A DNA stretch of 64,000 nucleotides from Oikopleura dioica (lineage: Eukaryota > Animalia > Chordata): assembly GCA_907165135.1 (NCBI GenBank), contig OU015569.1:4402001-4466000 (forward strand), written 5' to 3'. Under the pieces are notes generated by a model. That model saw nothing but the letters and a program-made list of their open reading frames with translations, was not told where the DNA came from and searched no databases. A program made the position numbers and the translations under genes. Below, one piece after another: positions 2,906 through 48,500 of this stretch (position 1 is its first letter; the number at the start of each line of letters is the position of its first letter).

Positions 2906-3418
2906 TTTTCTTGTTTTTCGGCGAGTTTGAATGAAACTGTCTTCGCTGATTGCTTTTTACTGAGTTGGTTATGGGTTCTTATGCAACATGATTATGATGG
3001 GAGGAGTGCTCTAGTGCCAACGTTACGTTTTTAATCTGATAACTAAATGTGTACGGCAACACTCAACTATACCCTACACTGGAGACTCGTCACCGGTTCA
3101 TATCCACTATATAATCAGTTTCAAGCGTAAAAAAAATCAGGAAAGATGTTTTTTTGTTATAGAAAAGGCTTATGGAAAGGGCCATATTAGATTGGGATCC
3201 TCGGTAAGCATATTATGAAGCGTCTTTTTTTAACGTCTTTTTTTAACAGTTCTTTCGACTTCAAGTCAAAGTAGTATAACACTGTTTTCTGAAAATGAAG
3301 CAAAAGTTTTCAATTAGTTTCTGGAAAATAATAATCATTGCTTTCTTCTTTTATATTGCACATTCATTTACTGATGAAGACTTTGAAGATTAGGGTCATT
3401 TTTGTACAGGGAGAGCTT

Positions 3419-33512: not shown

Positions 33513-34597
33513 CAAAAAAACCTACACGACCCTTGATTCGTACTTAAGTCTCATGGCACTACTCTCTTCTAGTGACTTCTTCAAAAACGCTGAGAACGCT
33601 TAAATAGTTGATCAGCAGGTGAAATTCCTCGTTTCAAGTTGTGATAGTGTTATCTATCACTGACCGTGTCGTTGTACACGCGAGTCGTCCTAATTTCTTC
33701 CCTAAATAGCCTTCGCCGTCCTGGTGCGTGAGAAAGACTTTGTGAGAAATTCCAAACAATTAAGAAAGTACCCAAAATCTGAGTTGAAAAAAAAATCTGA
33801 CCACTTGTTGGCGCGATCCAGAGGGCTTCTTTTCTGGACACGCTCTGAAGGAATACTACCCTCGCGACCTAGTTTGTTTATCTGATCATTAGGGGAGGAG
33901 GCATACGTACTCAGACTGTTGAGAAAATCAACATCTTCACGAACAGAATCAAGCAGAAAACAAAAAATACAGTTTAAAGAGAATCCAAGAAAAATACGAC
34001 GCGAGTACCAGGTTGCTGAAAAGTGACAAGGACGCGAGAAAAAGAGCAAGAAGAAGATATAGTCGAGGAAGATCAAAACTCAGACAGAAACCGAGAAGAA
34101 ACGCACGACTTCTAAGGAAATTACTTTTTTTTCATAAAAATTAACGGAGCTTGATGGAGCTATAGCGAGTGAAGATGAAAACTGCACATTATTTGTGCCA
34201 TTTATTACTGTCAGGTAACTTGATTGTTCTTAATTAGACGTCACCAAAAAAGTGAATCAATGGGTCAACAAATCAGTTCACTTAGCATTGAACTGAGAGT
34301 TCGTTTTTCCATACTGTAGCTTTCAGGTAAAAGGACTTTTGCCGGCAAGTTCACAAAAGGCATCCAAAAGCAAAAATGATAATAAACTCTGCTCTATTAA
34401 AAAAATAGACTCTTCGGTTCCCTTCGCCTTCCTCGAGGATGGAAAACTAGGAAATAATTAGTAAACACGAGTTTACTTTTATGAACATTAAAATCACAAA
34501 TCCTTGGTCATATAGCATTGCATCCCTAACATTTTAAATAGACATATTTCATCGAAAAACGCTATTGAAATCAAGGATGAGAACTTTCTATTTTTAG

Positions 34598-34843
34598 CAA
34601 CTTGGGCGATCCAAAATCTACGTGTTACAGAGCTGACGTCAAACTCGCTACAACTGAGCTGGGATAAAGAATCGCAATTCAAAGAATACGAAGTCACATT
34701 CAAGCGCTTTTCGAGGGCGAAACCAAAGAAATATGTTATCAAAGAAAATCTGATCCGCTTCCGGCGCACGAAACCAGCAAGGCGGTATTTTCTATCTGTC
34801 CAAGGCAACCGCGGTTTATCGTCCTTCCCGATGCTAAAAATAG
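34598..34843 (+). CDS. Fibronectin type III exon, probably an upstream exon of the VWA-Sushi-collagen gene
   Basis: IQNLRVTELTSNSLQLSWDKESQFKEYEVTF...RRTKPARRYFLSVQG is an FN3 signature, flanked by ttttag and G|gttt splice sites. Linkage to the downstream gene is not proven. Confidence 0.6.
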
Positions 34844-36277
34844 GTTTTTAAAATGTTTATTCTCAGCTCTGACCTTGTAAAAACAGGATTATGCGATAAA
34901 AATAATATTGTGTCCACGCGACCTCGTGAAATTTCCGTGCAAGGTCGCTCTGATTCTTGACAGATTCAGCAAAAATAAGGGAGTGCTAAGACCAGCTCAA
35001 ATTAAAATGAGCCTTTATTATGTTAATTTTATTACTACCAATATAAAACTACGAAACGTAAAAATCATCCCATGGTGGACGATATCTTTTATAATTTATA
35101 AAACTGACATAAACATAAAAATAAATGGAAGATCAACTTAAAACGCGTTAAAAAGGCATTGAACGGGACGGATCGACAGGTTCAATTGGAAAGATAAAAG
35201 TTCAAACCCGTAAGTGCATCGTTATAATTAATTTTTTACGTATCTCGATTTTATGGCGAATCTCACATATTAATTAGTGCGTTCACCTGCTGGAAATCCT
35301 GTTATTAAAAAGACCACCGAAACGTCAATAGAATTTTCCTTCGCGAAATCGAGTGATCCCAAGTAAGTTGACCATTACTGATCGGAGAGTTTAAAGTTTT
35401 AACAATTAATTTGCAAAATAGAAGCTATATTTATTTGCTACGTTTTAGATATAGTTCAATTAATTTTTATTAGTCGCCCTTGAATGGACATTCACGTAAC
35501 TGGCCGAGAATTTTCGGAAGCTATCTAAATATTTTCAAGCTTGGCGCGTGTAAGAGCTCACACCTCCTGCTCCAAGCCTTCAGAAGGTTCTAGTTTGATT
35601 ACGCGCCCGATTACTTGTACCCGAACGCGCACTGTCAGGCTGCCTGACAGCACATTGATCTATTACTGTATTGTTGAGGCGTAATGCCAGATGCAGTCTC
35701 CCAGGCATCCTTGGGAAAGGAATTCCAAAGTGGGAAAATCCTCGATTTTAGAATTTAGGGTCGAAAACTTGTCTCGTTTTATGTGATTTTGTGTGTCCCC
35801 TGCCGGGTAATAGTAAAATTGAATAATACATCCGAATCTCGCCGAGTGCTGCTAGGGACGTCATTTTATTGATAATCCTCACAATCCTCAAGCCAAGTTA
35901 ATTAAAATTTTTTCTTTTTTTTCACTTTCAAATCTTAAATCACTTGGCACACTTGTCACTTATCTGGTGCTAGGGCGAAAATTTTGAAATTTCATCAGAC
36001 AATCGAGATCGACACTCAGACTGATTCTTAGATTAAATACAGAGAGAGAGAGAGAATCACAGACAAGGAATTCGCAAAGGCATGAGGAGGGCCTGCTTAT
36101 GGCTCGTATGGTAAGGCTAGAGAATGATTGAACAGGCGGCAAAGGGGGGTTGATCGATAAGCGGAAAAAAGCGTGAAGTGCGTCCTCACGACGCCAGGCC
36201 CGAATGGAATCGACAAACATTCTATTCCGTATTTTGGGCTCGACCTTGACTGACCTAAGAACTTATTTGGTCGTAAG

Positions 36278-39200
36278 TTGTTAATTCAGTATAAATTCGT
36301 ATCTGGTCCGTGCAGAAGCAGTCAAAGGCGATGCGATCTCCTTCGAAAAACAGTCACAGACACAGACAATATCATCTTTGACAAATTGCAGCCAGACACA
36401 GAGTACAAGATATCAGTGGAAGGAATTTCCAAACTGCCACCAAAATCTGAGCCCAGCTTTTCTCACAGGCGCACGAAACGAGCATATGGAAGTTATCGAC
36501 CACAAACACCAGTTTCTACCTCCAGGAGGACCTCGTCACGCAATGTAAGTACTGCAAAGTTATATTTATTTTTTTAAAAGCTAATGTTAGAAAAATATAA
36601 CTTTATGACAAAAATTTCCAGCGTAACCAAGCAGCATCTACTCCATCATCTACATACGGATACCCAATTGTCGACAAGAGCAAGTTTGACCCAGATGCAA
36701 CAGTGATCAAGGAATGCAAGCGAATCGACCAAACGGACCTTGTAATTTTGATTGATGGTTCCTGGTCGGTGACGCCGACCAACTTTGAGCGGGTGAAGAT
36801 TTTCCTCAGCGCCCTGCTCAAACATTTTTCGATCGGGCACGATGCTTCTATGATTGGTATTGCCCAGTACTCTGATAACCCGCGTCTCGAGTTCGGTCTC
36901 AACGAACACTACGATTTTCCTTCGCTCAACGCCGCTGTCAATCGTATGAAATACAAAGGTGGCAACACTGCTACTGGGAAGGCCCTAACCTTTGCTCTCG
37001 ACCACGTTTTTGGCCGTTCTTCGAGACCTAATGCTCAAAAGGTCGTTCTGATCATCACTGACGGCGAATCACTGCAAGATACCGTTACCGAGCCAGCTCG
37101 CCGTCTTCGAGAAAACGGAGTTGAGATTTTCTCAATCGGTGTTGGTGATGAAATCAATCTTGAAGAGTTGAAAGACATGGCAACTGACCCCGATTCGAAC
37201 CATGTTTTCCAAGTTGGGGGATACAATGCCATTACGGGAATCACCACTCAAGTACTGAAAGATATCTGTCGAATCAAGGTCCTATGTGCTGAACTTCTGA
37301 CTCCGTCAAATGGAAGAAAGGACTGCACTAAAAAACAAGCGGTTGTAGGCGTACGTTGCAACTTCGACTGTCATACAGGCTACGATATCCGCGGCTCGAC
37401 CATGCGTGAATGCCAAGCTGAAGGCGGATGGTCAGGCCAGCAGCCAAATTGCGAACGAAGCACTTGTCCTGAACTCTCTGCGCCACAACATGGTCGACTT
37501 AGTTGCACTGAAGGAATTCGAATCGGAAGCCAATGTCGAACTACATGTTTGGAGGGCTACAAATTGCGTGGTTCGAAGACAACTAATTGCCAACTGAACG
37601 AGCGATGGTCACATGATTTACCAGTATGTGAGCTTGTCCGTTGCCCTGAGTTGCGAATTTCGCTGAGCCCGCATTTGCGAATGGACTGCACTGAAGGAAA
37701 CATCTATCGCTCGTCTTGCTCATTCTCTTGTGAAATCGGCTGGGAGCTCCGTGGCGATGACACTCTCGAGTGCGACGCATCTGGAAACTGGAATGGAGAC
37801 ATTCCATTTTGTCAGGAGATCGTCTGTGGGGCGCGAAGTGCCCCGTTGCATGGCCACATTAGCTGCTCAAACCGAGATAAGCACAACTCAAAGTGTTCGT
37901 ACAGCTGCGACTCGGGCTATGAGCTAATCGGCTCTGATGAAACCGTATGCCAGTCGGACGGACAATGGTCTTATCCAAGTCCAAAGTGTGTGAAAGTGTC
38001 ATGCGGTCCTTTGGTCGCACCCGAAAATGGACGTTTAGAATGCTCCGGCACAGATGCGCTTTTTGGCACCGAATGCGAGGCCATTTGTAATGAAGGAAAT
38101 GATTTTAAAACAGTTGATTCTCTATCTATTCGATTCAAATGTAATGTTTTAGTTTTATAACCATTAAAAGGATTTAAACTAACATCTGGCTCGAAGATCC
38201 GAAAATGTCTTCCTGACACGACTTGGTCTGGAACTCCTGCCCAATGCTCGCAAATTGTTTGCCCACTGCTTGACTCTCCTGATCACGGACGACGACTATG
38301 CTCGAATGCGAACAATTACGGAAGTCGATGTCGATTTGCTTGCCAAGTCGGTTACGACTTTACCGGAACAGAAATCAGAGTGTGTCAAGAAGACGGCACC
38401 TGGAGTGGTGAGCTCGCCAAGTGCTCTATCAAGGCCCGTTTTATGATTTTCAGCATAATTAACTACATTATATTATATATAATTTATATATCTCTCGATT
38501 CAAAACTCTTTTTTAGTAACTTAAAGTTTTTTTACTTCCACCAAGAAAGAGTTCACAAAATAATCGCAAACGTAAAACTCTTTGAAGGAATGCATTGAAG
38601 TTCCAAAGCCACTTTCTGGAGATGCTGACTGCTCGAACGGCAACCGTTTTAACTCGCTTTGTCGATACAACTGCGATGCTGGCTTCAATCTTGAGGGCGC
38701 GCGGGAGAACTTCTGTGGTTCAGGGCGGCGGGCTCAACGTTTTAATTAAACTAGGTTATCACATGTGCGCGAGTGATTTTTGACAGGCTGGTTAGCCTCC
38801 ACACAGATGGTCAGTGGTCGGTATCTCAAGCACCAGACTGCATTGTCGGCCAATGTGCTCCCCTCGATCCTCCAACTTTTGGCGAGATTAACTGCTCAGA
38901 TGACAACAGAGTTGGCTCTAAATGCGAATTCGCTTGTAACGAAGGCTACGAAATTTTCGGCGACGAGGTTCGCATCTGCGAAGACACTCACCTCTGGTCT
39001 GGACTCAAGCTAAAGGATCAAATAGTTTCACGATGAAATCTTTTTTTTATGAATAACAGGACTATCCTTACTACAGCCAAAATGTACGCCTACAGAATGC
39101 CCTATTCTGTCTTCTCCCAAAAACGGTGTTGTTTTATGCACTGCTGATCGAGCATATCGCTCGATTTGTCAGTTCAAATGCAACGACGGCTACTCCTTAA

Positions 39201-42200
39201 TCGGAAACAGGTACGTAATGAGTCTTAGTGCTCCAAGTAAAGAGCGCTCTAGTTTGATGGAATGCACGGCTACCAAGAAGTGGAATCCCGAGGAAGCGCC
39301 AATTTGCGTCGAAATTGTCTGTCCAATTATGCCCAAGCTGGAAAACGGAAATACAAAATGCTCAGATGAGAATCGTCATCAATCAGTTTGCAGATTCGTT
39401 TGTGGCGAAGGTAATTCCAACCTTGCTAGAAAGAATTAGGTTAAACTGGGAGGCAGATTTCGAATATACCATATTTACAATTTTTATGTTGTAGATAAGG
39501 GCATTTTTAAATAAACTTTGAGGATACCGACTGAAGGGCTCACGTTCTTCAATCTGCTCCACTGATGGAAAGTGGTCTGCTGAAATGCCAGTTTGTGAGG
39601 AAATCGTGTGTGACGAACTTCCAACTCCACAAGACGGATCCAAGGACTGTTCAGGCGATAAATTTGGCGAAAAGTGCTTGTTTTCTTGTGATACTGGATT
39701 CGATCTTTCTGGTTCCGAAGAGCGAACATGCCAGGCCGATGGAACATGGACCGGTGTCCCTGTTCACTGCACCAAAGCCACTTGTGGTCTTCTGCCCAAG
39801 GTATTTTTTAAATGCTTAAAGGGTTGAATACATTAATTCTAGCCCCGCCATGGATCCGTACAGTGCTCCGCTGGTGGCGATTTTGGCTCGGTTTGCTCTT
39901 TTACTTGCGATTCCGGTTATTCTCTTGTTGGATCCAAAACAAGAACGTGTGAGGCCGACCACGCTTGGTCCGGGTCTCAGCCTTATTGTCTTCAAGTCAC
40001 GTGTTCTGTTCTTGTCCCACCTGCAAATGGATACCTTTCATGCTCAGCCGGAAATTTGTTCAACTCAATCTGTACCTTTAGTTGCAAAACTGGATTCAAT
40101 CTTCAGGTAGGGTCCAAAACATTTTTTAACTCTTGTAAAAGGAAATGTTTGCAACCCTTTTTCTCAGGGTAACAATGAAGCAAAATGCGGGCTGAAAGGA
40201 GAATGGGATAATTCTCCTCCAACTTGCTCGATTATGTCCTGCCCACCTGCTGTGGAACTGGATCATGGACGAAGTCGATGTTCAGACGGATCAAACTACG
40301 GCTCTCGTTGCAGCTATTCCTGCAATCTCGGTTATGAGCTGGAAGGCTCGTCAAGTCGCGAGTGCTTGGATATTGGTTGGTCCGGTGAAAGTCCATTTTG
40401 CTCGCTCATCAGATGTCCTCGACATCCAGTTCCTGATAACGGAAAGATGTCTTGTACAAATAGGCATGGTGATAAATTATTTCTTTTCAAATGACCAACT
40501 ACTATATCAATGAGATTTAACGTGTCTCTTTTTTCAATTTTTCACACCATAAATAGGAACAAATACGACTCCGAATGCAGTTTCAGCTGCGATCCAGGGT
40601 ACAACCTTCTCGGTCCAAACGAACGAAAATGTGGCGCAGACCACAAATGGTCTGGTTCTCGGGAACCAATGTGCGAACTTATCCGCTGCTCGACTCTGGA
40701 CGCACCTTTCCACGGAACAATTAACTGTGCAAATTCGGACTTTTATGGCTCAGAATGCGAGTTCCACTGCGAAACTGGCTATGAGCTTATTGGCTCTGAT
40801 GTTAGAACGTGTGGTGTTAATCAGGTAAGATAAATACTAAAAGAGGGGAAGGAATACTTTTAATCAGATTTCATAACTGCAGTTGTGAACAAGTTTTATT
40901 GTTCAAGTCAACTAAAAATAAAAATTTATAAAGAGTATCATTTTTAACAGTTTCTTCGTCTGGTTGGAATCAACATAAAATAGTTCTAAAATAAGCCTGA
41001 GAGTCTTTCTGAGCTCATCAATCAGAGTTAGCTCATCAAAAAGTTCACTGTCGTTTAGAACTGGTCTGGCGTTCACCCAATTTGTCAGCCTATAACATGT
41101 GGTGAGCTGACTTCCCCACAGCACGGCTCCATTCTTTGCTCTAACGCGGACGGCTACGGTAGCAGTTGCAAGTTTTTCTGCGATCTTGGCTACTCGCTCG
41201 AAGGCAGTAAAGACCGAGAATGTACAGCGAAGGGTAAATGGACAGGGGAGCAGCCACAGTGCATTGAAGTCAGATGTGGACAAATGGAATCGCTTCATCA
41301 CGGAAAAACAGTTTGTACAGATGAGGATATGTTCAGCTCAGGAAAGTGATGAAATTTGAACAACTTAACGAATTTTCTTATCGACTGTTATGATACATAT
41401 TTGGATAGATTTGAAAAAAATATGATCAACTGAAAAGTTTGCACGAACGAGTGTGACTCTGGATTCCAGTTGACCGGCTCGCGAGTTCGAATCTGCGAAT
41501 CAAGCGGTACCTGGTCTGGCCGCGTCGCCAAGTGTGTCGAGGTTTCTTGTCCGCCAATCGAACTTGAGCCTCATACCTCTGCTTCCGGCTCGTGCGCTGT
41601 CCAGCCACAAAATTACGGTCGAGTTTGCACCTTTTTCCCCGACTCTGGATGGGAACTGGTTGGTGCTAGACAGGTTCTTTGCCAAGGTTTGACAATTAAT
41701 CAAACGCAAAATAATAAATAAAATGCAGGTTCTGGGCGATGGTCTGAGATTCCACCTACCGCCGAGTTGGTCAAATGTGGTGATTTGGGAAACATTGCTC
41801 ATGGCGCCGTGAGCTGTAGCTTTGGTTCTACTTTTGGTTCTGTCTGCTCTTATAAATGCGATCTCGGATATACACCTATTGGTTCAACAGAAATTAAGGT
41901 GATAACACAACATTTCTGAAAGTATTTAAATGTACAACTGATTAGTGCGGAAGAGATCGTTCATGGGACGATTTCCCGCCTTTCTGCCAAATTAATCGGT
42001 GCGAGCCACTGACTGAACCTTCGAATGGACGCATGTTCTGCGTAGCTGACAACACATTCGGCTCCGAGTGTGCAATGTCGTGCAATATGGGATACATGCT
42101 TCGAGGGTCCTCTTCTCGAACCTGCGGCGCCGATCAAAAGTGGTCAGGCGAACCCGCAGAGTGCGTCGCGGTGCAATGTGAAGCCATTCACGAACCAGGT

Positions 42201-44944
42201 GAGACGATGCTAGTTTAGGGCTTTTACTTAGATTCTTTCAGAATACGGAACTATGATTTGCTCGAAGAACAGGAATTTCGGCTCAATCTGCACGATCAAT
42301 TGCGACAGTGGCTATGACTTAATCGGACCAAGGCAGCGAGCTTGTGGCGCAGAAGGCCGCTGGTCTGGTTTGCCACCAACTTGCGAATTGATCCACTGTG
42401 GACCGACGACTTCTCCTCAACACGGAAATGTTACCTGTTCCATGTTCGATCAGTTCGGCTCGCAGTGCCAGTATGAGTGTAATGAAGGAATCGGTTTATA
42501 ATGTGATGCAATACTAGTTCTTATAAGCCAAGTCTTTTGAATCGTATTTAAACTCTGTAAAGGTTACAAACTCGTTGGCTCAAATAGCCGAGTGTGCCAA
42601 GAATCAGGTGCTTGGACCGGAATTCAACCAGTATGTGAGTTGGTTCAATGTAGACCACTTGCCTCGCCCGAAAATGCGTTTGTTGCCTGTTCATCTGGAA
42701 ATGACTACAACTCACGATGCCGTTACGTTTGCACGGTCGGATTTGAGCTTGTTGGTTCGGATAACAGAGTGTGCCAAGCGAATGGACGCTGGACAGGAGA
42801 TAGACCTTATTGCGAACAGGTAACTAGTTATTGAAAGTCAGCAAAAAAATGTAAATAAATGGAGAGAATTTTATTATTTTAAGTTTCATATCGAAATAGC
42901 AAAAAAGCAAGAAATGTTTTCATAAATTCGCTTAGATGTCGTCCAACGTGGGAATGGTAATCTAATCTCGTCTTTTTTTAAGATTACATGTGGTGTGCTG
43001 TCCGATATCCCTAGAGGTCGCATAGTGTGCGCTGATGAGGATCGCTACAATTCCGAGTGCGCGTACAAATGCAATTCTGGCTTCTCGATATACGGATCTA
43101 CGACTCGTCGCTGCCTCGAAACTGGAAAATGGTCGGGCTCGGTTCCAGAGTGTCACCGAGTCAGTTGTCCAGCGCTTCTGCCTCCAGATCACGGTTCGAT
43201 GAAGTGCAACCAAGAAAGCCATCACAATTCCACTTGTTCAATTACATGCGATACTTGCTTTACTCTGGTCGGATCAACGGCTAGGCGATGTCGCGCTGAT
43301 GGTCTTTGGTCGGGAGAAGAACCACTTTGTCAGAGGTATTTTGAATCTGTAGGGCATATTTTAATACTTCAGATCTCAATGCACACCTTTGTTGAATCCG
43401 TTGAATGGAAAGAAGCATTGTTCGATGGGCGACGAGTGTGGATCAGAGTGTAGTTTTAGCTGTCTACCGGGATTCAGCATGTCTGGAAACGATACGAGAA
43501 CATGTACAGCCGACGGCGGATGGACCGGAACAACGCCGAAATGCATTCGCGAAAGTTGTATTCCGATGAACCCTGATCCGGAACTGACGATGACATGTTC
43601 TGACGACAATAAAGTCGGGTCTAATTGCACCTTTACTTGTCCTCCAGACCAGGTAACTGTCGATTCCGTTCTTAGCTTTCAATAAAAATGCAATAGAATT
43701 TGATCGGCTCCAAATGGCGAGAATGCACCTCCACAGGACAATGGACGAACACGCTTCCAGTCTGTCGTCAATGCTCCCACCTCAAATCAGACTTAGTCTT
43801 TATCATCGATGGCTCCTGGTCTGTAGGAAACGAAAACTTTAGAAAAGCGAAAGATTTCATGAAGTCCCTCGGTAATCAACAATTTCATTTCTTTATTTAA
43901 AATCGTGCTACGTTTAGTGAATCCGTTTGAAATCGGCTGGGACTACACACGAGTCGCCGTGCTTCAGTACTCGGATGATCCAAGAATCGAGTTCTATCTT
44001 AAAGACTATCAGGATAAGACGACACTTTTGAATGCAATCGATGCCATAACATACAAAGGTGCGTAGTCCGACCTGAATTATATTTAACAACACTTTATTC
44101 AAGGTGGAAACACAAGGACTGGAGAGGCTATTCGGTATATGATGGGGCACATTTTCTCTGTCGAAGCTGGCTCACGGCCGTACGTCAAAAAACATATGGT
44201 TTTACTTACTGATGGACAGTCTCAGGCAATTTTAAATATATAAAATCTTTGGTTACATAATATTAGGATGATGTGGGAGCACCAGCCCGCGCAGCAAAGA
44301 ATTTCAACATTCGAACATTCGCGATCGGAGTCGGTCAAGCAATCGAGGATGAGCTGAAGCTCGTGGCAACTCCACCATTTTCGTAAGTAGAGGAAACGTT
44401 AGCATGTCAAATGCCAGCGCATAACATGACGAGTTGACAGCTGATTTCACGAATTATGCCCTGACGAAATATCATTTAGAGACACTCTTTACCATGTCGA
44501 AGATTATGATGGAATTCGCCATTTGCAAGATACGCTTGCGTTTAAGTTCTGCGAAGATCTTGGTAAGATAAGTTGGAAAACAAAATTTACTTTTTTGTAG
44601 AGCCACAAATGAACGCAGCAATGACTGGCGGCTACGGCGGAGAATGTGTGTGCCCAGCGGGTCCCCTTGGTCCTCAAGGTCCAGAAGGACCGGCCGGCCA
44701 GCCTGTAAGTAGAGCATCTCCCGGCGCTTGGAAAACGCATTTTTAGGGCCGCCCGGGTCCGCCTGGTGTTCCTGGTTTGATGCCACCTAGTTCTCTGGAC
44801 AAGGAAGACGTCATCGAGCTTTGCCGGCAAGTTTCGACGAACGTGTTCCGTCGCTCGCGAGCTCAAAGTGCAGCAGTAGCAGCTAACAGCGGCAGCCGAC
44901 GCCAGTCATTAAACAACCGCCGTCGCCCAAATAATAGAAATTAA
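36278..44944 (+). CDS. Giant secreted mosaic protein: FN3 - VWA - 28 x Sushi/CCP - VWA - short collagen (9 Gly-X-Y) - FACIT-like tail; 5' end unresolved
   Basis: FN3 (FDKLQPDTEYKISV); two VWA domains with intact MIDAS (DLVILIDGSWS, DLVFIIDGSWS) resembling collagen XII/XIV VWA; 28 manually counted six-Cys CCP repeats (about 37285-43767); ECVCPA-GPLGPQGPEGPAGQP|GRPGPPGVPGLM; DKEDVIELCRQVSTNVF; stop at 44942-44944. Confidence 0.9.
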
Positions 44945-45566
44945 CAGAAAGATCTTCCCTTCTTAAGTTCACGAAAAACAACAACCAACCGCCAAAAGTT
45001 TCCAATATACGAATATATCGATACTAAAATAATTCAATACTTTGTATAGTTACCATTCTCATGATCCATCGACACTATCCGAGCGAAACGATTCCATTGT
45101 ATAATATCTGTGAAAAAATGAAATAAAATGCTTCTCACTTCAATTTCAAGCCTTCTATTTATGACTGGTATTGCCGTCATTATTTAATTTCGCAATGACA
45201 TGAAGTTATTTCAGTAATTTGCTTTTTTAAAAGAAAAAATACGATAAGGCCCGTTTTGGGTTGTTATCAGTCCTCAGAGAGGTGGCGGGGCTTACAGGTG
45301 ATGAGAGTGGCGAGGCGCGGCCCTTTCTCTCTTCTGGTGGTGGCGTTGCAGGAGAGAACGTGTGGTGCTCGGGAGTCAGAATTACGCGAATCACCGCAAG
45401 AACACAGAGAATCAAGAATTACTTCCGATTTTTCGACAAAAATGTTGATTCCCATCAACTCTTGATTCGATTTTTAGTGGCACAAAAGTTAGAGATAATT
45501 TTGACGAAACAAGAGAGATTAAAAAAAAAGAGAAACTGAAGAAGAAAAAGACAGGTGGAAGTATCC

Positions 45567-48500
45567 ATGAAGCTAGGCTATTTGGTGGCCTCGCTCAACC
45601 TCGTCGACGCACAGAAAAGTCCGATAGTTGGAGAATGGGGAGAATGGTCTCAGTGTGATGCGCCCTGTGGAGTCGGTGAAAGAGTAAGTTTTTTCTGTTT
45701 GAAAAGGGAGCTGGAACAAGGGTATTTTAGCGACGTGAACGAAGATGTCTTATAACGAATTTTCGGCGCTGCAATAAGCAGCCCGGTGGGTTAGTTGAAG
45801 TAGAAGACTGTAATACGGAGGAATGCACAGGGGATCCGTATTGGTCAAATTGGTCGGAAAAGAACAAGTGCTCTGAGACTTGCGGCGGTGGAACTCAGTC
45901 GCGCTTCAGATATTGCATCGGCGGTGAAGCAGGCGATGTTGGTTGCGAAGGAATCTCAGAAGAGGTCACTCCTTGCGCGACAGAGCTTTGTCCAGGCGAT
46001 TTGTGCAAGGACTCGTTTTTCGATGTGGCCATCCTTATTGAAGCGAATACCGCATCACTTTCATACAATCCCCAAATCAAGTCATTTTTGAAGAATTTAA
46101 TCGGAAGTTACAAAGCGATTTCTTCCAATGACGCTAGACTTTGCTTGATGAGGTTTTCTTCTTGGCCAGAGATCTTGAACACCTTTGACGAAATCGAAAG
46201 CTATGGGGATGCAGTGGAAATTATTGATTCAATACCTTTTTATGGAAAAGACGCCGACTTGGCGGCTGCTCTTTTTGCACTCCAAGACGAGTGTTTCGAT
46301 CTTTCAACAGGATGGCGAGGAACAGAATTAAACAACAACGGAGTCGCCAGTCAGACCATCATCATCACTTCATCGAACAGCACAATCAATCAAATTGACA
46401 CCATCAGATTGAAGAAAAAGTCACAGCGTATATTTGCAATTACTCTTGGAGATTCGAGTATAGAAAATGTCGAGCTGCTCGTTTCCGATCCTGTCGAGGA
46501 GAATTACTTCGAAGGCGCTTTTTTAGACGACGTATTGGCTGAAGCGATCGTGCAACGTCAATGCTCAAATGAGCTCTTCCCAGATCAATGTTACAGTAAT
46601 TCCGGAAGAGGGTCATGCGATGGTGAGTGTTTCACGCAGTACAATGGAGTGCGTTGCACCTGTCCCAAAGGCACGTTTTTACTCGAGGATGGAGCCACTT
46701 GTGAAGACATAGACGAGTGCGCCACGGGAACTCATGACTGTCTTGATCATCAGACTTGTTCTAATTCATTCGGCGGCTTTCGATGCGGCACAATCATGCA
46801 CGACTGCCCTGCTGGCTTTCCTTGCTCACATGGATGCGGTGGCGGGGGTGGCATTGGTGGAGCTCTCTCAATATTTGAAATGGAAATCGGTCAAAGTTCT
46901 CCCTGCACTTGTCCTTTTGGAATGGTTCTTGGACCGGACAATTTAACCTGCATGGATCAGGATTCGGTTTGAATTTTCATGCCTGCGATTTAAGGGGGTA
47001 GAAACAGCTTTTTTCGAAAAAGGCGATTTTTGAACAGCGCCCAAGCTCAGCCAACCTTAGATTTTTAAATTCTCTCTTCGATTTAAGTTAGATCTATCTT
47101 AGATCTAAAAGCATCTGTTTTTAAATTTTTTTTTTGTTTAGCCAGTTTAGCGCTATAGAGCGAAACATCAACCCATCTCGTCGAAAATCCCGATTTTCGC
47201 CAATTTTTAAACAAGATTATCTCGAGTCACATGACTAGCCGAGAATTTTCTATATCATTATAAGATAGTTTAACCCTTTTTCTAGGAGCATCTACAACGA
47301 AATTTGTGTGATCATAAAAAATGATAATGTTGAGAGTCCGATTGAAACTTCTGTCTCAAATTTTCAAAATTTTGAATTTGAAACACAATTTTTTTGTGAT
47401 ACCCTTAAGTCATCGTCCTACCTTAATTATTCACGATGATCATTTGATCCAAATGAAACAATCTAATCGGCGTTCAACCCTTTATTTAACGATTTTAGTC
47501 CTCGATAAATTTCGAAAGTCCCAAATTTGCCCCAAAACTCCAATTTTAAATGCAATTTTAAGGACTTTCTAACAAAGTAAGGGGGTAATTTTTGATAGCA
47601 TTTTTATTCTTTATGTCCTAGGCTTTCAGAATTTTAGAAAAAATCTCTCAGTTTCCATCTTTGGCAAAAGCTGTTTCTACCCCCTTAACAATAAAGCCAA
47701 ACAAGTAGATTCTAGATTCTGAATAATATTTGTTTTGAATTAACGACCAAACCCAAAAAAGATTCCGATCTTTCTCTTGGATGAGTGCAAGAATAATAAC
47801 GGAGGATGTTCTCATATTTGCCGAGATCTCGACGATGGTTTTGTATGCGAGTGTCCTGAAGAACTTGGACTATCTGACGACGGCCTAACTTGCGTATCTA
47901 TTTGCTATACGTGTGAAAACGCAGCAGACCTAACAGAGTGTCAACAGACAGAATTATGTCCTTCTTCGACGACTCCATGTGTAACGAAAATAAGCAGCGG
48001 TGAAAATGGAGCAAGCCTGATCTCGAAGGGTTGCGAGAGCACTGAACGCTGCATCAAAGATGGAAGCGACAAGCCTGTTAATTTTTGGACATCTCCGAAA
48101 TGTGAAGGTGACACGTGCGACTGTTGCTGCTATGATAGCTTCTGCAACACCGGAGCCGACTGCGCTGCTGCTAGATCACCTTTTTTAGCCTGCCCTGAAC
48201 GACCTCAATCGGATCTCGTAAGCTTATTGCAAGAAAAAAACTAGACGCACAAGTTAATGACTCTGAATGATTCAATAACTTTTTTGTATTTAAATTTTCG
48301 AGTTTATTATTTGGCACAAATTTTAGAAAGTTTTTGGAATTCCCTTTTTTTGGAGAAAGTTTTTGGAATTCCCTTTTTCGGGAAAAGTTTTTGGAATTCC
48401 CTTTCTGGACTTCTTTTTCGAAGAGGCGCTATCCCTTCTGGGACAATGTTTATTTTATCTGTCCCTGCGCTCAATCGTTCGAGAAATTTGTATTCTCGCC

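What the first reader, a model, noticed from the sequence alone, without database searches (positions are those of the whole stretch)
36278..44944. FACIT-collagen-like chimera in which 28 Sushi repeats form the rod between two collagen XII/XIV-type VWA domains
Seen: FN3, VWA (DGSWS MIDAS), 28 tandem six-Cys CCPs, a second VWA, CxC plus only 9 Gly-X-Y triplets, then DKEDVIELCRQVSTNVF. Known: vertebrate collagen XII/XIV use VWA + FN3 arrays + short collagen + an NC2 helix of the form ..IRQVC/ARQVCEQL.. that drives trimerisation; six-Cys CCPs are typical of selectins and SVEP1. Inference: a lineage-specific, probably trimeric long spacer/cross-linker produced by domain shuffling. I do not recognise this architecture from any named protein.
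Basis: partly seen in the sequence, partly recalled or inferred. Interest (0 to 1): 0.8.

Follow-up and report, generated by a model that had tools for sequence, protein, structure and literature searches.

The report
Sushi-rod collagen-like matrix protein of tunicates
This is one real, very long secreted matrix gene of the larvacean Oikopleura dioica (two FN3, a VWA, 28 Sushi repeats, a second VWA, a nine-triplet mini-collagen and a helical tail); it is not a larvacean invention but the cut-down ortholog of a 3,566-residue sea-squirt protein with a full interrupted collagen tail, a family that seems never to have been described.

Summary
Pfam, read exon by exon, finds VWA1, Sushi in every coding piece, and VWA2 in four colinear pieces. 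My exon model gives exactly 28 tandem CCPs, nine uninterrupted Gly-X-Y triplets after a CxC, then a helix-prone basic tail and a stop codon.

Two intron-less, transcript-type contigs join the last CCPs, VWA2, the collagen exons and the tail exactly as modelled. One encodes the public O. dioica protein fragment (94% identical); the other comes from a deeply diverged lineage.

The architecture is not larvacean-specific. Ciona intestinalis XP_026693209.2, auto-named "SVEP1-like", has FN3x2-VWA-about 41 CCP-VWA-CxC-COL-NC-COL-NC-COL and is colinear with the window. The larvacean copy lost most of the collagen, including the last collagenous domain.

VWA2 groups with the VWA of FACIT collagens XXI/XXII, not XII/XIV or SVEP1. 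Homology of the tail to the FACIT NC2 domain is not statistically shown, and the tail Cys is not conserved. Trimerisation is plausible but untested.

Verdict: a new variant of a known kind, of moderate interest.

The parts
34175..34214 (+). Tentative first exon: ATG plus a 13-codon hydrophobic leader (MKTAHYLCHLLLS), donor G|GTAACT, phase 1. It joins in frame to the FN3 exon at 34598, which would give a ..ATWA|IQ.. signal-peptide-like end.
   Evidence: Read by eye from the sequence. Phase-compatible, but not verified by RNA or by a homolog.
34598..34843 (+). FN3 domain 1, a single exon.
   Evidence: Pfam fn3 30.4 bits against a cut-off of 25, E 4.6e-07, on window:34516-34848. Acceptor ..tttttag at 34597 and donor GTTTTT at 34844.
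35278..35362 (+). FN3 domain 2, first half (..RSPAGNPVIKKTTETSIEFSF..), with donor GTAAGT in phase 2.
   Evidence: Sequence reading. It continues in phase into 36290.
36290..36544 (+). FN3 domain 2, second half, plus a Ser/Arg-rich linker. There is an apparent 1-nt deletion in an A-run at about 36341-36345 relative to the reference genome, where the same exon is read in one frame.
   Evidence: Pfam fn3 17 bits, below the cut-off. Reference locus L008 frame 2 reads ..SYLVRAEAVKGDAISLEKSVTETDN..DKLQPDTEYKISVEG.. without a break. The DNA alignment shows the single gap.
36622..37284 (+). Linker and VWA domain 1 (about 36736-37248), with a complete MIDAS (DGSWS .. GGNTATG .. ITDGES).
   Evidence: Pfam VWA E 4.1e-48. 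Colinear with Ciona P0003 residues 427-982, 36% identity, E 3e-109. Sister to Ciona VWA1 in the tree, 95/96.
37285..43765 (+). Array of 28 tandem CCP/Sushi modules separated by 4-residue linkers and spread over 19 exons. 25 have six Cys. CCP19 (41563-41760) has lost the Cys II/IV pair. CCP26 and CCP27 each have a seventh Cys.
   Evidence: Pfam Sushi in every piece. Exon model and regex count. Self-HMM finds 28 domains.
43790..44562 (+). VWA domain 2 over five exons (43697-43871, 43918-44058, 44104-44225, 44267-44382, 44480-44562), with a complete MIDAS, ending ..FKFCEDL.
   Evidence: Pfam VWA pieces are colinear on the profile. The junctions are gap-free against the intron-less contigs L004 and L009. 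The tree places it with collagen XXI/XXII VWAs.
44601..44659 (+). Variable Gly/Tyr-rich linker, then the CxC motif (Cys codons at 44645-44647 and 44651-44653) in ..GECVCPAG..
   Evidence: C-x-C-P-A-G-P is invariant in three larvacean lineages and two ascidian-type proteins.
44660..44782 (+). Nine uninterrupted Gly-X-Y triplets: five in 44660-44704 and four in 44747-44782, split by the 42-nt phase-0 intron 44705-44746 (GTAAGT..TTTTAG).
   Evidence: The junction is exact in the intron-less contig L009 (1134|1135). Other larvacean lineages have 9-10 triplets.
44783..44944 (+). Non-collagenous tail: ..PPSSL.., a predicted alpha-helix (about 44804-44905, ..EDVIELCRQVSTNVFRRSRAQ..), a basic end ..RRRPNNRN, and the stop at 44942-44944. 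It aligns with the segment between the last two collagen domains of the Ciona protein and ends where Ciona's last collagen domain begins.
   Evidence: Alignment A1, 41% identity to Ciona. AlphaFold2 monomer of the reference-strain tail predicts a helix at residues 61-93, pLDDT about 70-79. L009 stays colinear with the genome for about 170 nt beyond the stop.

Best explanation
The locus is a single gene of about 10.8 kb and about 29 exons in an Oikopleura dioica lineage. It encodes a secreted matrix protein of about 2,370 residues with this order: signal peptide, FN3, FN3, linker, VWA, 28 tightly linked six-Cys CCP modules, VWA, CxC, (Gly-X-Y)9, and a helical basic tail.

It is the ortholog of Ciona intestinalis XP_026693209.2. 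That protein has the same order of parts but about 41 CCPs and a full interrupted collagen tail: a short COL, an NC segment, a COL of about 23 triplets, a helical NC segment, and a COL of about 30 triplets. The family is therefore a tunicate-wide collagen whose collagen-proximal VWA is of the FACIT XXI/XXII type. Its long arm is a Sushi rod rather than an FN3 array. In larvaceans the collagen part has been trimmed to 9-10 triplets and the last collagenous domain is lost.

Shown: gene structure, domain content, orthology, transcript joins, and strong purifying selection.

Inferred: three chains associate at the C-terminus. The helical tail nucleates the assembly, the mini triple helix zips up, and the invariant CxC just before it forms interchain disulfides. 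The result would be a three-armed molecule with CCP rods of about 100 nm, each tipped and based by a metal-dependent (MIDAS) VWA adhesion domain. Such a molecule would act as a long-range spacer or cross-linker in the extracellular matrix.
For: Domains:

- Pfam read by exon.
- 28 CCPs.

Orthology:

- tblastn of Ciona P0003 is colinear from VWA1 (427-982 to 36706-38427, E 3e-109) to the first collagen exon (3269-3288 to 44645-44704, 60% identity).
- P0003 has Pfam fn3 x2, VWA x2, Sushi x37 and Collagen x2. The window's own CCP HMM finds 41 CCPs in it.
- The VWA tree pairs window and Ciona VWA1 (95/96). It pairs the VWA2s (99/93), and these sit beside the collagen XXI/XXII and Clavelina FACIT-like VWAs (94/86). 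Tunicate SVEP1-like VWAs fall elsewhere.

Transcript joins:

- L004 (intron-less, ORF of 380 aa) and L009 (intron-less, encodes the O. dioica protein P0418 exactly) carry CCP27-28, VWA2, CxC, the GXY run and the tail in one frame.
- The window exons abut on L009 at 393|394, 709|710, 831|832, 947|948 and 1134|1135.
- P0418 is 93.8% identical to the window model and ends at the same residue.

Selection:

- Between the window and L004, pS is 0.94 (saturated) against pN 0.10 over 271 codons.
- Despite this, all lineages keep C-x-C-P-A-G-P and an uninterrupted run of 9-10 GXY, while the X/Y residues and the tail diverge.

Helix:

- The AlphaFold2 monomer predicts a 33-residue helix in the tail.
- The amphipathic moment is above shuffles for the window tail, p about 0.02.
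Against: - No test of oligomeric state was possible. AlphaFold here is monomer-only, and its model has low overall confidence (mean pLDDT 60).
- Nine triplets are short for an autonomous triple helix.
- The tail after the GXY run is poorly conserved even among larvacean lineages. The amphipathic signal is absent in L004 and P0417 (p 0.4-0.6), and the helix Cys is not conserved.
- Sequence and profile searches do not link the tail to the solved or aligned FACIT NC2 domains.
- The 5' exons and the joins within the first 24 CCPs rest on prediction and on colinearity with Ciona, not on RNA. Seven of 25 modelled introns have non-GT donors, and only one of these (GC-AG at 44226) is verified.
- The reference O. 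dioica annotation splits the locus into four models.
- The tissue of expression is unknown. The only oikosin described with a VWA domain (Oik35) does not map here.
Confidence: 0.6

Rival explanations
1. The protein is a monomeric Sushi rod. The 9-10 Gly-X-Y triplets are a decaying remnant of the ancestral collagen tail, or a flexible proline-rich hinge or ligand site. They do not form a triple helix, and the protein works as a single-chain spacer with a VWA at each end.
For: - Relative to Ciona, the larvacean copy has lost most of the collagen and the whole last collagenous domain.
- The tail after the GXY run evolves fast, with weak or no amphipathic signal in two lineages.
- There is no significant match to any solved trimerisation domain.
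Against: - Synonymous sites between lineages are saturated (pS 0.94). Even so, the Gly register is perfect over 27-30 residues in all three larvacean lineages.
- The CxC immediately before the run is invariant from larvaceans to ascidians. That pattern is the signature of selection on a triple-helix start rather than of decay.
Confidence: 0.27
2. The locus holds several separate genes, as in the public reference annotation (four models: VWA; Sushi; Sushi; Sushi+VWA). On this view the long architecture is a gene-model fusion.
For: The reference genome GCA_000209535.1 annotates four models across the homologous 12 kb. No RNA evidence was available for the joins upstream of CCP25.
Against: - The CCP array is continuous, with phase-compatible short introns that often split single CCP modules between the supposed genes.
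- The internal models would lack start codons and signal peptides of their own.
- The whole span is colinear with one Ciona RefSeq protein.
- Transcript-type contigs bridge the last part.
Confidence: 0.05
3. It is the tunicate SVEP1 ortholog, as the automatic names of the Ciona proteins suggest.
For: RefSeq names P0003 and related proteins 'SVEP1-like'. A VWA followed by six-Cys CCPs is also how SVEP1 begins.
Against: - No EGF, pentraxin or HYR domain is found in the window gene or in P0003.
- Both proteins end in VWA plus collagen.
- In the VWA tree the tunicate SVEP1-like VWAs form a separate, well-supported group away from both VWAs of this gene.
Confidence: 0.04

Closest known systems
[quoted passage not shown]
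   Same: The order of parts is the same: signal, FN3 x2, VWA, long six-Cys CCP array, VWA, CxC-P-A-G-P, Gly-X-Y, helical non-collagenous segment. The two are colinear by tblastn, and both VWAs are reciprocal sisters in the tree.
   Different: - Ciona has about 41 CCPs against 28.
- Ciona has three collagenous segments (about 7, about 23 and about 30 triplets). A 60-residue NC segment follows the first, and a helical segment lies between the last two.
- The window gene keeps only 9 triplets and stops where Ciona's last collagenous segment starts.
FACIT collagens XXI and XXII (and the larger XII/XIV/XX)
   Same: - They are extracellular proteins with VWA (and, in XII/XIV/XX, FN3) domains on the N-terminal side of short collagen helices, and a helical NC2 segment after a collagen helix.
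- VWA2 is 42-47% identical to collagen XXI/XXII VWAs and is their sister group in the tree.
- A tunicate FACIT-like protein (Clavelina P0437) also joins VWA to the collagen through a CxC without TSPN.
   Different: - There is no TSPN/LamG domain and no C-x4-C at the end of the last helix.
- The window gene has only one collagenous segment.
- The arm is built of CCPs, not FN3.
- NC2 homology is not demonstrable.
SVEP1 and selectins
   Same: Six-Cys CCP modules in long tandem arrays. SVEP1 also starts with a VWA. Selectin and SVEP1-like proteins are among the best CCP matches, at 35-40% identity.
   Different: There are no EGF, pentraxin, HYR or C-lectin domains. The VWAs are not of the SVEP1-like clade. 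The C-terminus is VWA plus collagen.
Collagen VI long chains (alpha3-alpha6)
   Same: A VWA is followed directly by a Cys cluster ending in C-x-C, one or two residues before the first Gly-X-Y. These chains gave the highest summed scores for the VWA2+collagen region of the Ciona protein, because of their many VWAs.
   Different: Collagen VI has a single helix of about 335 residues flanked by VWAs on both sides, and no CCPs. Its VWAs fall in other clades of the tree.

Membership tests
FACIT collagens | Two or more short collagenous (COL) domains interrupted by non-collagenous (NC) domains | tested here: not met
   The window gene has a single run of 9 triplets. The Ciona ortholog does have three COL segments, so the family ancestor met this feature.
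FACIT collagens | Two Cys separated by four residues at the COL1-NC1 junction | tested here: not met
   The window has no COL1. The Ciona P0003 and P0420 tails end ..GRPGKTIYKKK.. / ..GAGRRKKSKK.. without Cys. Clavelina FACIT-like P0437 does have GKCSREDC.
FACIT collagens | NC2 alpha-helical trimerisation domain following a collagen helix | tested here: inconclusive
   - A helix is predicted, and a shared [IL]-x-[RK]-x-[IV] motif is visible by eye.
- PDB phmmer gives E 1.5 to the collagen IX NC2 chimera 5ctd. Profile searches find nothing.
- A collagen XII NC2 HMM scores -1.3 bits on Ciona and nothing on the window.
- hhalign gives probability 19%, P 0.0012, with a shifted register.
FACIT collagens | TSPN (thrombospondin N-terminal-like / LamG) domain before the collagenous region | tested here: not met
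   Pfam finds no such domain in any exon or in P0003. VWA2 is followed within about 25-35 residues by CxC and Gly-X-Y.
FACIT collagens | VWA domain related to FACIT VWAs | tested here: met
   The VWA2 clade is sister to the collagen XXI/XXII plus Clavelina FACIT-like VWAs, with UFBoot/SH-aLRT 94/86. Identity to collagen XXI/XXII is 42-47%. VWA1 is unresolved.
SVEP1 | VWA + CCP together with EGF/EGF_CA, HYR and pentraxin domains | tested here: not met
   Only fn3, VWA, Sushi and (in Ciona) Collagen are found. The VWAs lie outside the tunicate SVEP1-like clade.
Collagen superfamily (triple-helix-forming proteins) | Uninterrupted Gly-X-Y repeats rich in Pro that form a homo- or heterotrimeric triple helix | tested here: inconclusive
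   The repeat is present (9 triplets, 8 of 18 X/Y positions are Pro) and its register is conserved across lineages with saturated synonymous sites. Triple-helix formation cannot be tested with these tools.
Oikosins (Oikopleura house proteins, Hosp et al. 2012, PMC3390340) | Identified in the house proteome and expressed in the oikoplastic epithelium | tested here: inconclusive
   The in situ primers for Oik35, the oikosin described with a VWA, have no match (up to 3 mismatches) in the 22-kb reference locus. The other oikosins were not checked, and no peptide lists were available.

The most novel reading that the evidence does not exclude
Tunicates have an undescribed collagen subfamily in which the arm of a FACIT-type collagen is a Sushi rod of about 100-150 nm. 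In larvaceans this has been pared down to one of the shortest natural triple-helix units known: 9-10 triplets clamped by an invariant CxC knot and a short helix. The resulting three-armed molecule would carry six VWA domains and work as a cross-linker, possibly in the filter-house or the epidermal matrix. It would offer a natural minimal system for studying collagen trimer nucleation.
Probability: 0.3. Interest if true: 0.65.

Novelty: new variant of a known kind. Interest (0 to 1): 0.5.

Why it matters
- It adds a clade to the collagen and matrisome inventory of the closest invertebrate relatives of vertebrates. In it, familiar modules (FACIT-type VWA plus interrupted collagen) are combined with a selectin/SVEP1-type Sushi rod.
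- It corrects two public annotations: 'SVEP1-like' in Ciona, and four fragment models in O. dioica.
- It gives a clean example of extreme reduction of a collagen domain in the compact larvacean genome.
- If the 9-10-triplet unit with its CxC clamp does trimerise, it is a compact natural trimerisation module. It would also bear on how FACIT-like collagens select and register chains.

Tried and rejected
Intron-less public contigs served instead.
2. The exhaustive protein search with the VWA1+5-CCP exon found no protein above 40% identity. The window's own N-terminal part is not in the library.
3. The region search with the Ciona VWA2+collagen tail was swamped by collagen VI alpha3, whose many VWAs give large summed scores.
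4. NC2 homology was tested with PDB phmmer and profile searches, a collagen XII NC2 HMM, and hhalign. All were non-significant or inconsistent.
5. A hidden last collagenous domain downstream of the stop was rejected. tblastn with the Ciona tail hits only 44645-44920. The Gly-rich reading at 45231-45536 is not Gly-X-Y periodic. The transcript contig L009 stays colinear with the genome for about 170 nt past the stop.
6. Identity with oikosin 35 was rejected for the reference locus.
7. Literature searches for Oikopleura/Ciona with FACIT, sushi and the accession numbers found no description of this protein.
8. My first splice heuristics, which favoured long GT-AG introns, were wrong. They were replaced by CCP-consistent short introns, including GA-AG and GC-AG.

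Full report
**What is in the window**

The region is a short-intron eukaryotic gene on the + strand. I searched it exon by exon, by reference.

- Pfam finds a VWA domain (E 4e-48) in the large exon 36622-38095.
- It finds Sushi in every stop-free coding piece between 37285 and 43765.
- A second VWA is split over four exons whose pieces cover profile positions 1-27, 25-75, 77-116 and 119-154 in order.
- Both VWAs keep a full MIDAS motif (DGSWS .. GGNT.TG .. TDG).

**Exon model and handling of the joined sequence**

I built an exon model from splice-site scans constrained by the CCP consensus. It has 26 exons from 36290 to 44944, a single open frame, and a stop at 44942-44944.

The joined model was made and used only inside local scripts, for counting, pairwise alignment, a dN/dS estimate and the VWA tree. 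It was never sent to a database-search or folding tool. For those I used exon references, or the natural intron-less contigs and public proteins.

**The Sushi array**

An HMM built from the gene's own repeats finds exactly 28 CCPs, separated by 4-residue linkers.

- 25 modules have the six-Cys pattern.
- CCP19 has lost the canonical Cys II and Cys IV together. That is what one expects of a real protein that drops one disulfide.
- CCP26 and CCP27 each carry a seventh Cys.

Seven of the 25 modelled introns have GA or GC donors. This fits what is known of Oikopleura splicing (my own knowledge: Denoeud et al. 2010). One of them, GC-AG at 44226, is directly verified below.

**The tail**

Three introns with consensus sites (44383-44479, 44563-44600, 44705-44746) give this reading..FKFCEDL | EPQ..GGYGGECVCPAG + 5 GXY | 4 GXY + ..PPSSLDKEDVIELCRQVSTNVFRRSRAQ..RRRPNNRN*. 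That is nine uninterrupted triplets, with 8 of 18 X/Y positions being Pro.

- Coordinate 36278 is only a mechanical ORF start inside the second FN3.
- An FN3 that passes Pfam's cut-off lies at 34598-34843.
- A phase-compatible exon at 34175-34214 encodes a short hydrophobic leader (tentative).
- FN3 number 2 is split between 35278-35362 and 36290-36544.
- In the reference O. dioica genome this second exon is read in one frame. The window lacks one base in an A-run near 36341-36345. I take this for a homopolymer assembly error, but could not check reads.

**Whose gene it is, and the RNA-level evidence**

A scan of metagenome contigs with a two-CCP exon returned seven loci.

L004 is 82% identical at the protein level and is intron-less. 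A single ORF of 380 residues runs through CCP27-28, VWA2, CxC, ten GXY triplets, a tail and a stop.

The last protein search then found P0418, 'unnamed protein product [Oikopleura dioica]', 369 aa.

- It is 93.8% identical to the C-terminus of my model and ends at the same residue.
- It is encoded exactly by L009, an intron-less 1,522-bp contig assembled from run SRR26183954, and by the reference genome GCA_000209535.1.
- The window's last nine exons map contiguously onto L009. The boundaries are exact at 393|394, 709|710, 831|832, 947|948 and 1134|1135.
- L009 continues colinear with the genome for about 170 nt past the stop.

So in O. dioica, and in a deeply diverged relative, the collagen exons are joined to VWA2 and the Sushi array, and nothing is spliced on after the tail.

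The reference annotation splits the locus into four models: VWA 321 aa, Sushi 332 aa, Sushi 540 aa, and Sushi+VWA 369 aa. The joins upstream of CCP25 rest on prediction and on colinearity with Ciona only.

**Not a larvacean invention**

The exhaustive search with the VWA1+5-CCP exon found P0003, which is Ciona intestinalis XP_026693209.2, 3,566 aa, auto-named 'SVEP1-like'.

- Pfam gives fn3 x2, VWA x2, Sushi x37 and Collagen x2. The window's CCP HMM finds 41 CCPs.
- tblastn is colinear from VWA1 to the first collagen exon.
- The Ciona tail reads: VWA2 ..LCEGE.. RCGCPAGPPG (about 7 triplets), a 60-residue NC segment, about 23 triplets ending GRPGPPGSPG, a helical NC segment, about 30 triplets, and a basic end.
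- The window's last exon aligns with GRPGPPG[S/V]PG plus the helical segment (41% identity). It stops precisely where Ciona's last collagenous domain begins.
- Two further marine contig proteins of ascidian type (P0420, P0436) have the same CCP-VWA-CGCPAGPPG-collagen tail, with a clearly coiled-coil-like NC segment.

Larvaceans are usually placed as sister to all other tunicates (my own knowledge). On that view the architecture dates at least to the tunicate ancestor, and the Oikopleura gene is a reduced derivative.

**Selection**

Between the window and L004, synonymous sites are saturated (pS 0.94). Non-synonymous divergence is 0.10 over 271 codons of CCP and VWA2.

Against that background, three larvacean lineages (window/P0418, L004, P0417) keep 9, 10 and 9 perfectly periodic triplets. 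All five available tails, larvacean and ascidian, keep C-x-C-P-A-G-P invariant. Meanwhile the X/Y residues, the linker and the post-collagen tail diverge strongly. This argues that the collagen register and the CxC are functional, not decaying.

**Relation to known families**

A maximum-likelihood tree of 50 VWA domains gives these groupings:

- It pairs window and Ciona VWA1 (95/96).
- It pairs the VWA2s (99/93).
- It places the VWA2 clade next to collagen XXI, collagen XXII and a Clavelina FACIT-like protein (94/86).
- The tunicate SVEP1-like VWAs sit elsewhere.
- VWA1 is unresolved among collagen VWAs.

The Clavelina protein P0437 has VWA, RCAC, collagen, an NC2 of the ..IATRVCQAL.. type, a further collagen domain, and GKCSREDC. 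So tunicate FACIT-like collagens join the VWA to the helix through a CxC, without a TSPN domain, as here.

The other FACIT hallmarks are not met in the window gene: no TSPN, no C-x4-C, and only one collagenous segment.

It is not significant in any test, and the helix Cys is not conserved. Collagen VI long chains share the VWA-CxC-GXY junction, but their VWAs lie in other clades.

I did not check it.

**Mechanism**

Shown:

- It is a secreted-type modular protein.
- It has two MIDAS VWAs separated by 28 tightly linked CCPs.
- Taking roughly 3.5-4 nm per CCP (my own estimate), the rod would be about 100 nm long.

Inferred:

- The C-terminal unit trimerises. It consists of the CxC, 9-10 triplets, and a predicted 33-residue helix (AlphaFold2 monomer, pLDDT about 70-79 in the helix, mean 60).
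- That would give a three-armed cross-linker.

I put about 0.55-0.6 on trimerisation and about 0.27 on a monomeric rod with a non-helical remnant. The tissue is unknown. Oik35, the house protein described with a VWA (PMC3390340), does not map to this locus.

**Novelty**

I found no paper describing a Sushi-rod collagen in Oikopleura or Ciona. The known Ciona 'type IX-like/FACIT' collagen (Vizzini et al. 2002, 2008, cited in PMC5612238 and PMC8495957) is known to me only by title; I did not read those papers or compare sequences, so I assume, but have not shown, that it is a different gene.

The sequences exist in public databases, but they are misnamed in Ciona and fragmented in O. dioica. I rate this a new variant of a known kind, with moderate interest (0.5).

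Noticed in passing
window 36341-36345: There is a one-base deletion in an A-run (TTCGA-AAAACAG) relative to the reference O. dioica genome. It puts the two halves of the FN3 number 2 exon in different frames. Third-codon-position differences continue on both sides, so both halves are under coding constraint. This is probably a homopolymer assembly error.
   Followed up: partly
window introns at 38096, 38434, 39016, 40464, 41342, 42488, 44226: Seven of 25 modelled introns need GA-AG or GC-AG boundaries to keep the CCP or VWA consensus. GC-AG at 44226-44266 is confirmed by two intron-less contigs. The other six are unverified.
   Followed up: partly
window 41563-41760 (CCP19): This one CCP has lost canonical Cys II and Cys IV together (..CTFFPDSGW.. 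and ..PPTAE..). That is a paired loss of one disulfide inside an otherwise intact array.
   Followed up: no
L008 (O. dioica reference FN653016.1:574883-597015): The public annotation cuts this gene into four separate protein models (321, 332, 540 and 369 aa). The same TSP1/EGF gene follows downstream, as in the window.
   Followed up: yes
window 45555-46972 and beyond: The next gene on the same strand starts about 600 bp after the stop. It has a signal peptide, a TSP1 repeat (WGEWSQCDAPCG), a VWA and EGF_CA. It is a separate gene, and other findings of this scan cover it.
   Followed up: no
window 43380-44562 vs L004 and L009: Lineage divergence is very deep. Nucleotide identity to the reference-strain transcript is about 81% at 94% protein identity. 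Against L004, synonymous differences are saturated (pS 0.94, above the 0.75 random expectation, which suggests different codon preferences).
   Followed up: partly
window 35363-36289: The intron inside FN3 number 2 is 927 nt, unusually long for this genome. It holds an 86-codon ORF on the minus strand (35960-36220) with no evident homology. This was not examined.
   Followed up: no
P0437 (Clavelina lepadiformis, 583 aa): This ascidian FACIT-like collagen has VWA-RCAC-collagen, an ..IATRVCQAL.. NC2 and a terminal GKCSREDC, but no TSPN domain. Loss (or absence) of TSPN may therefore be general in tunicate FACITs.
   Followed up: no
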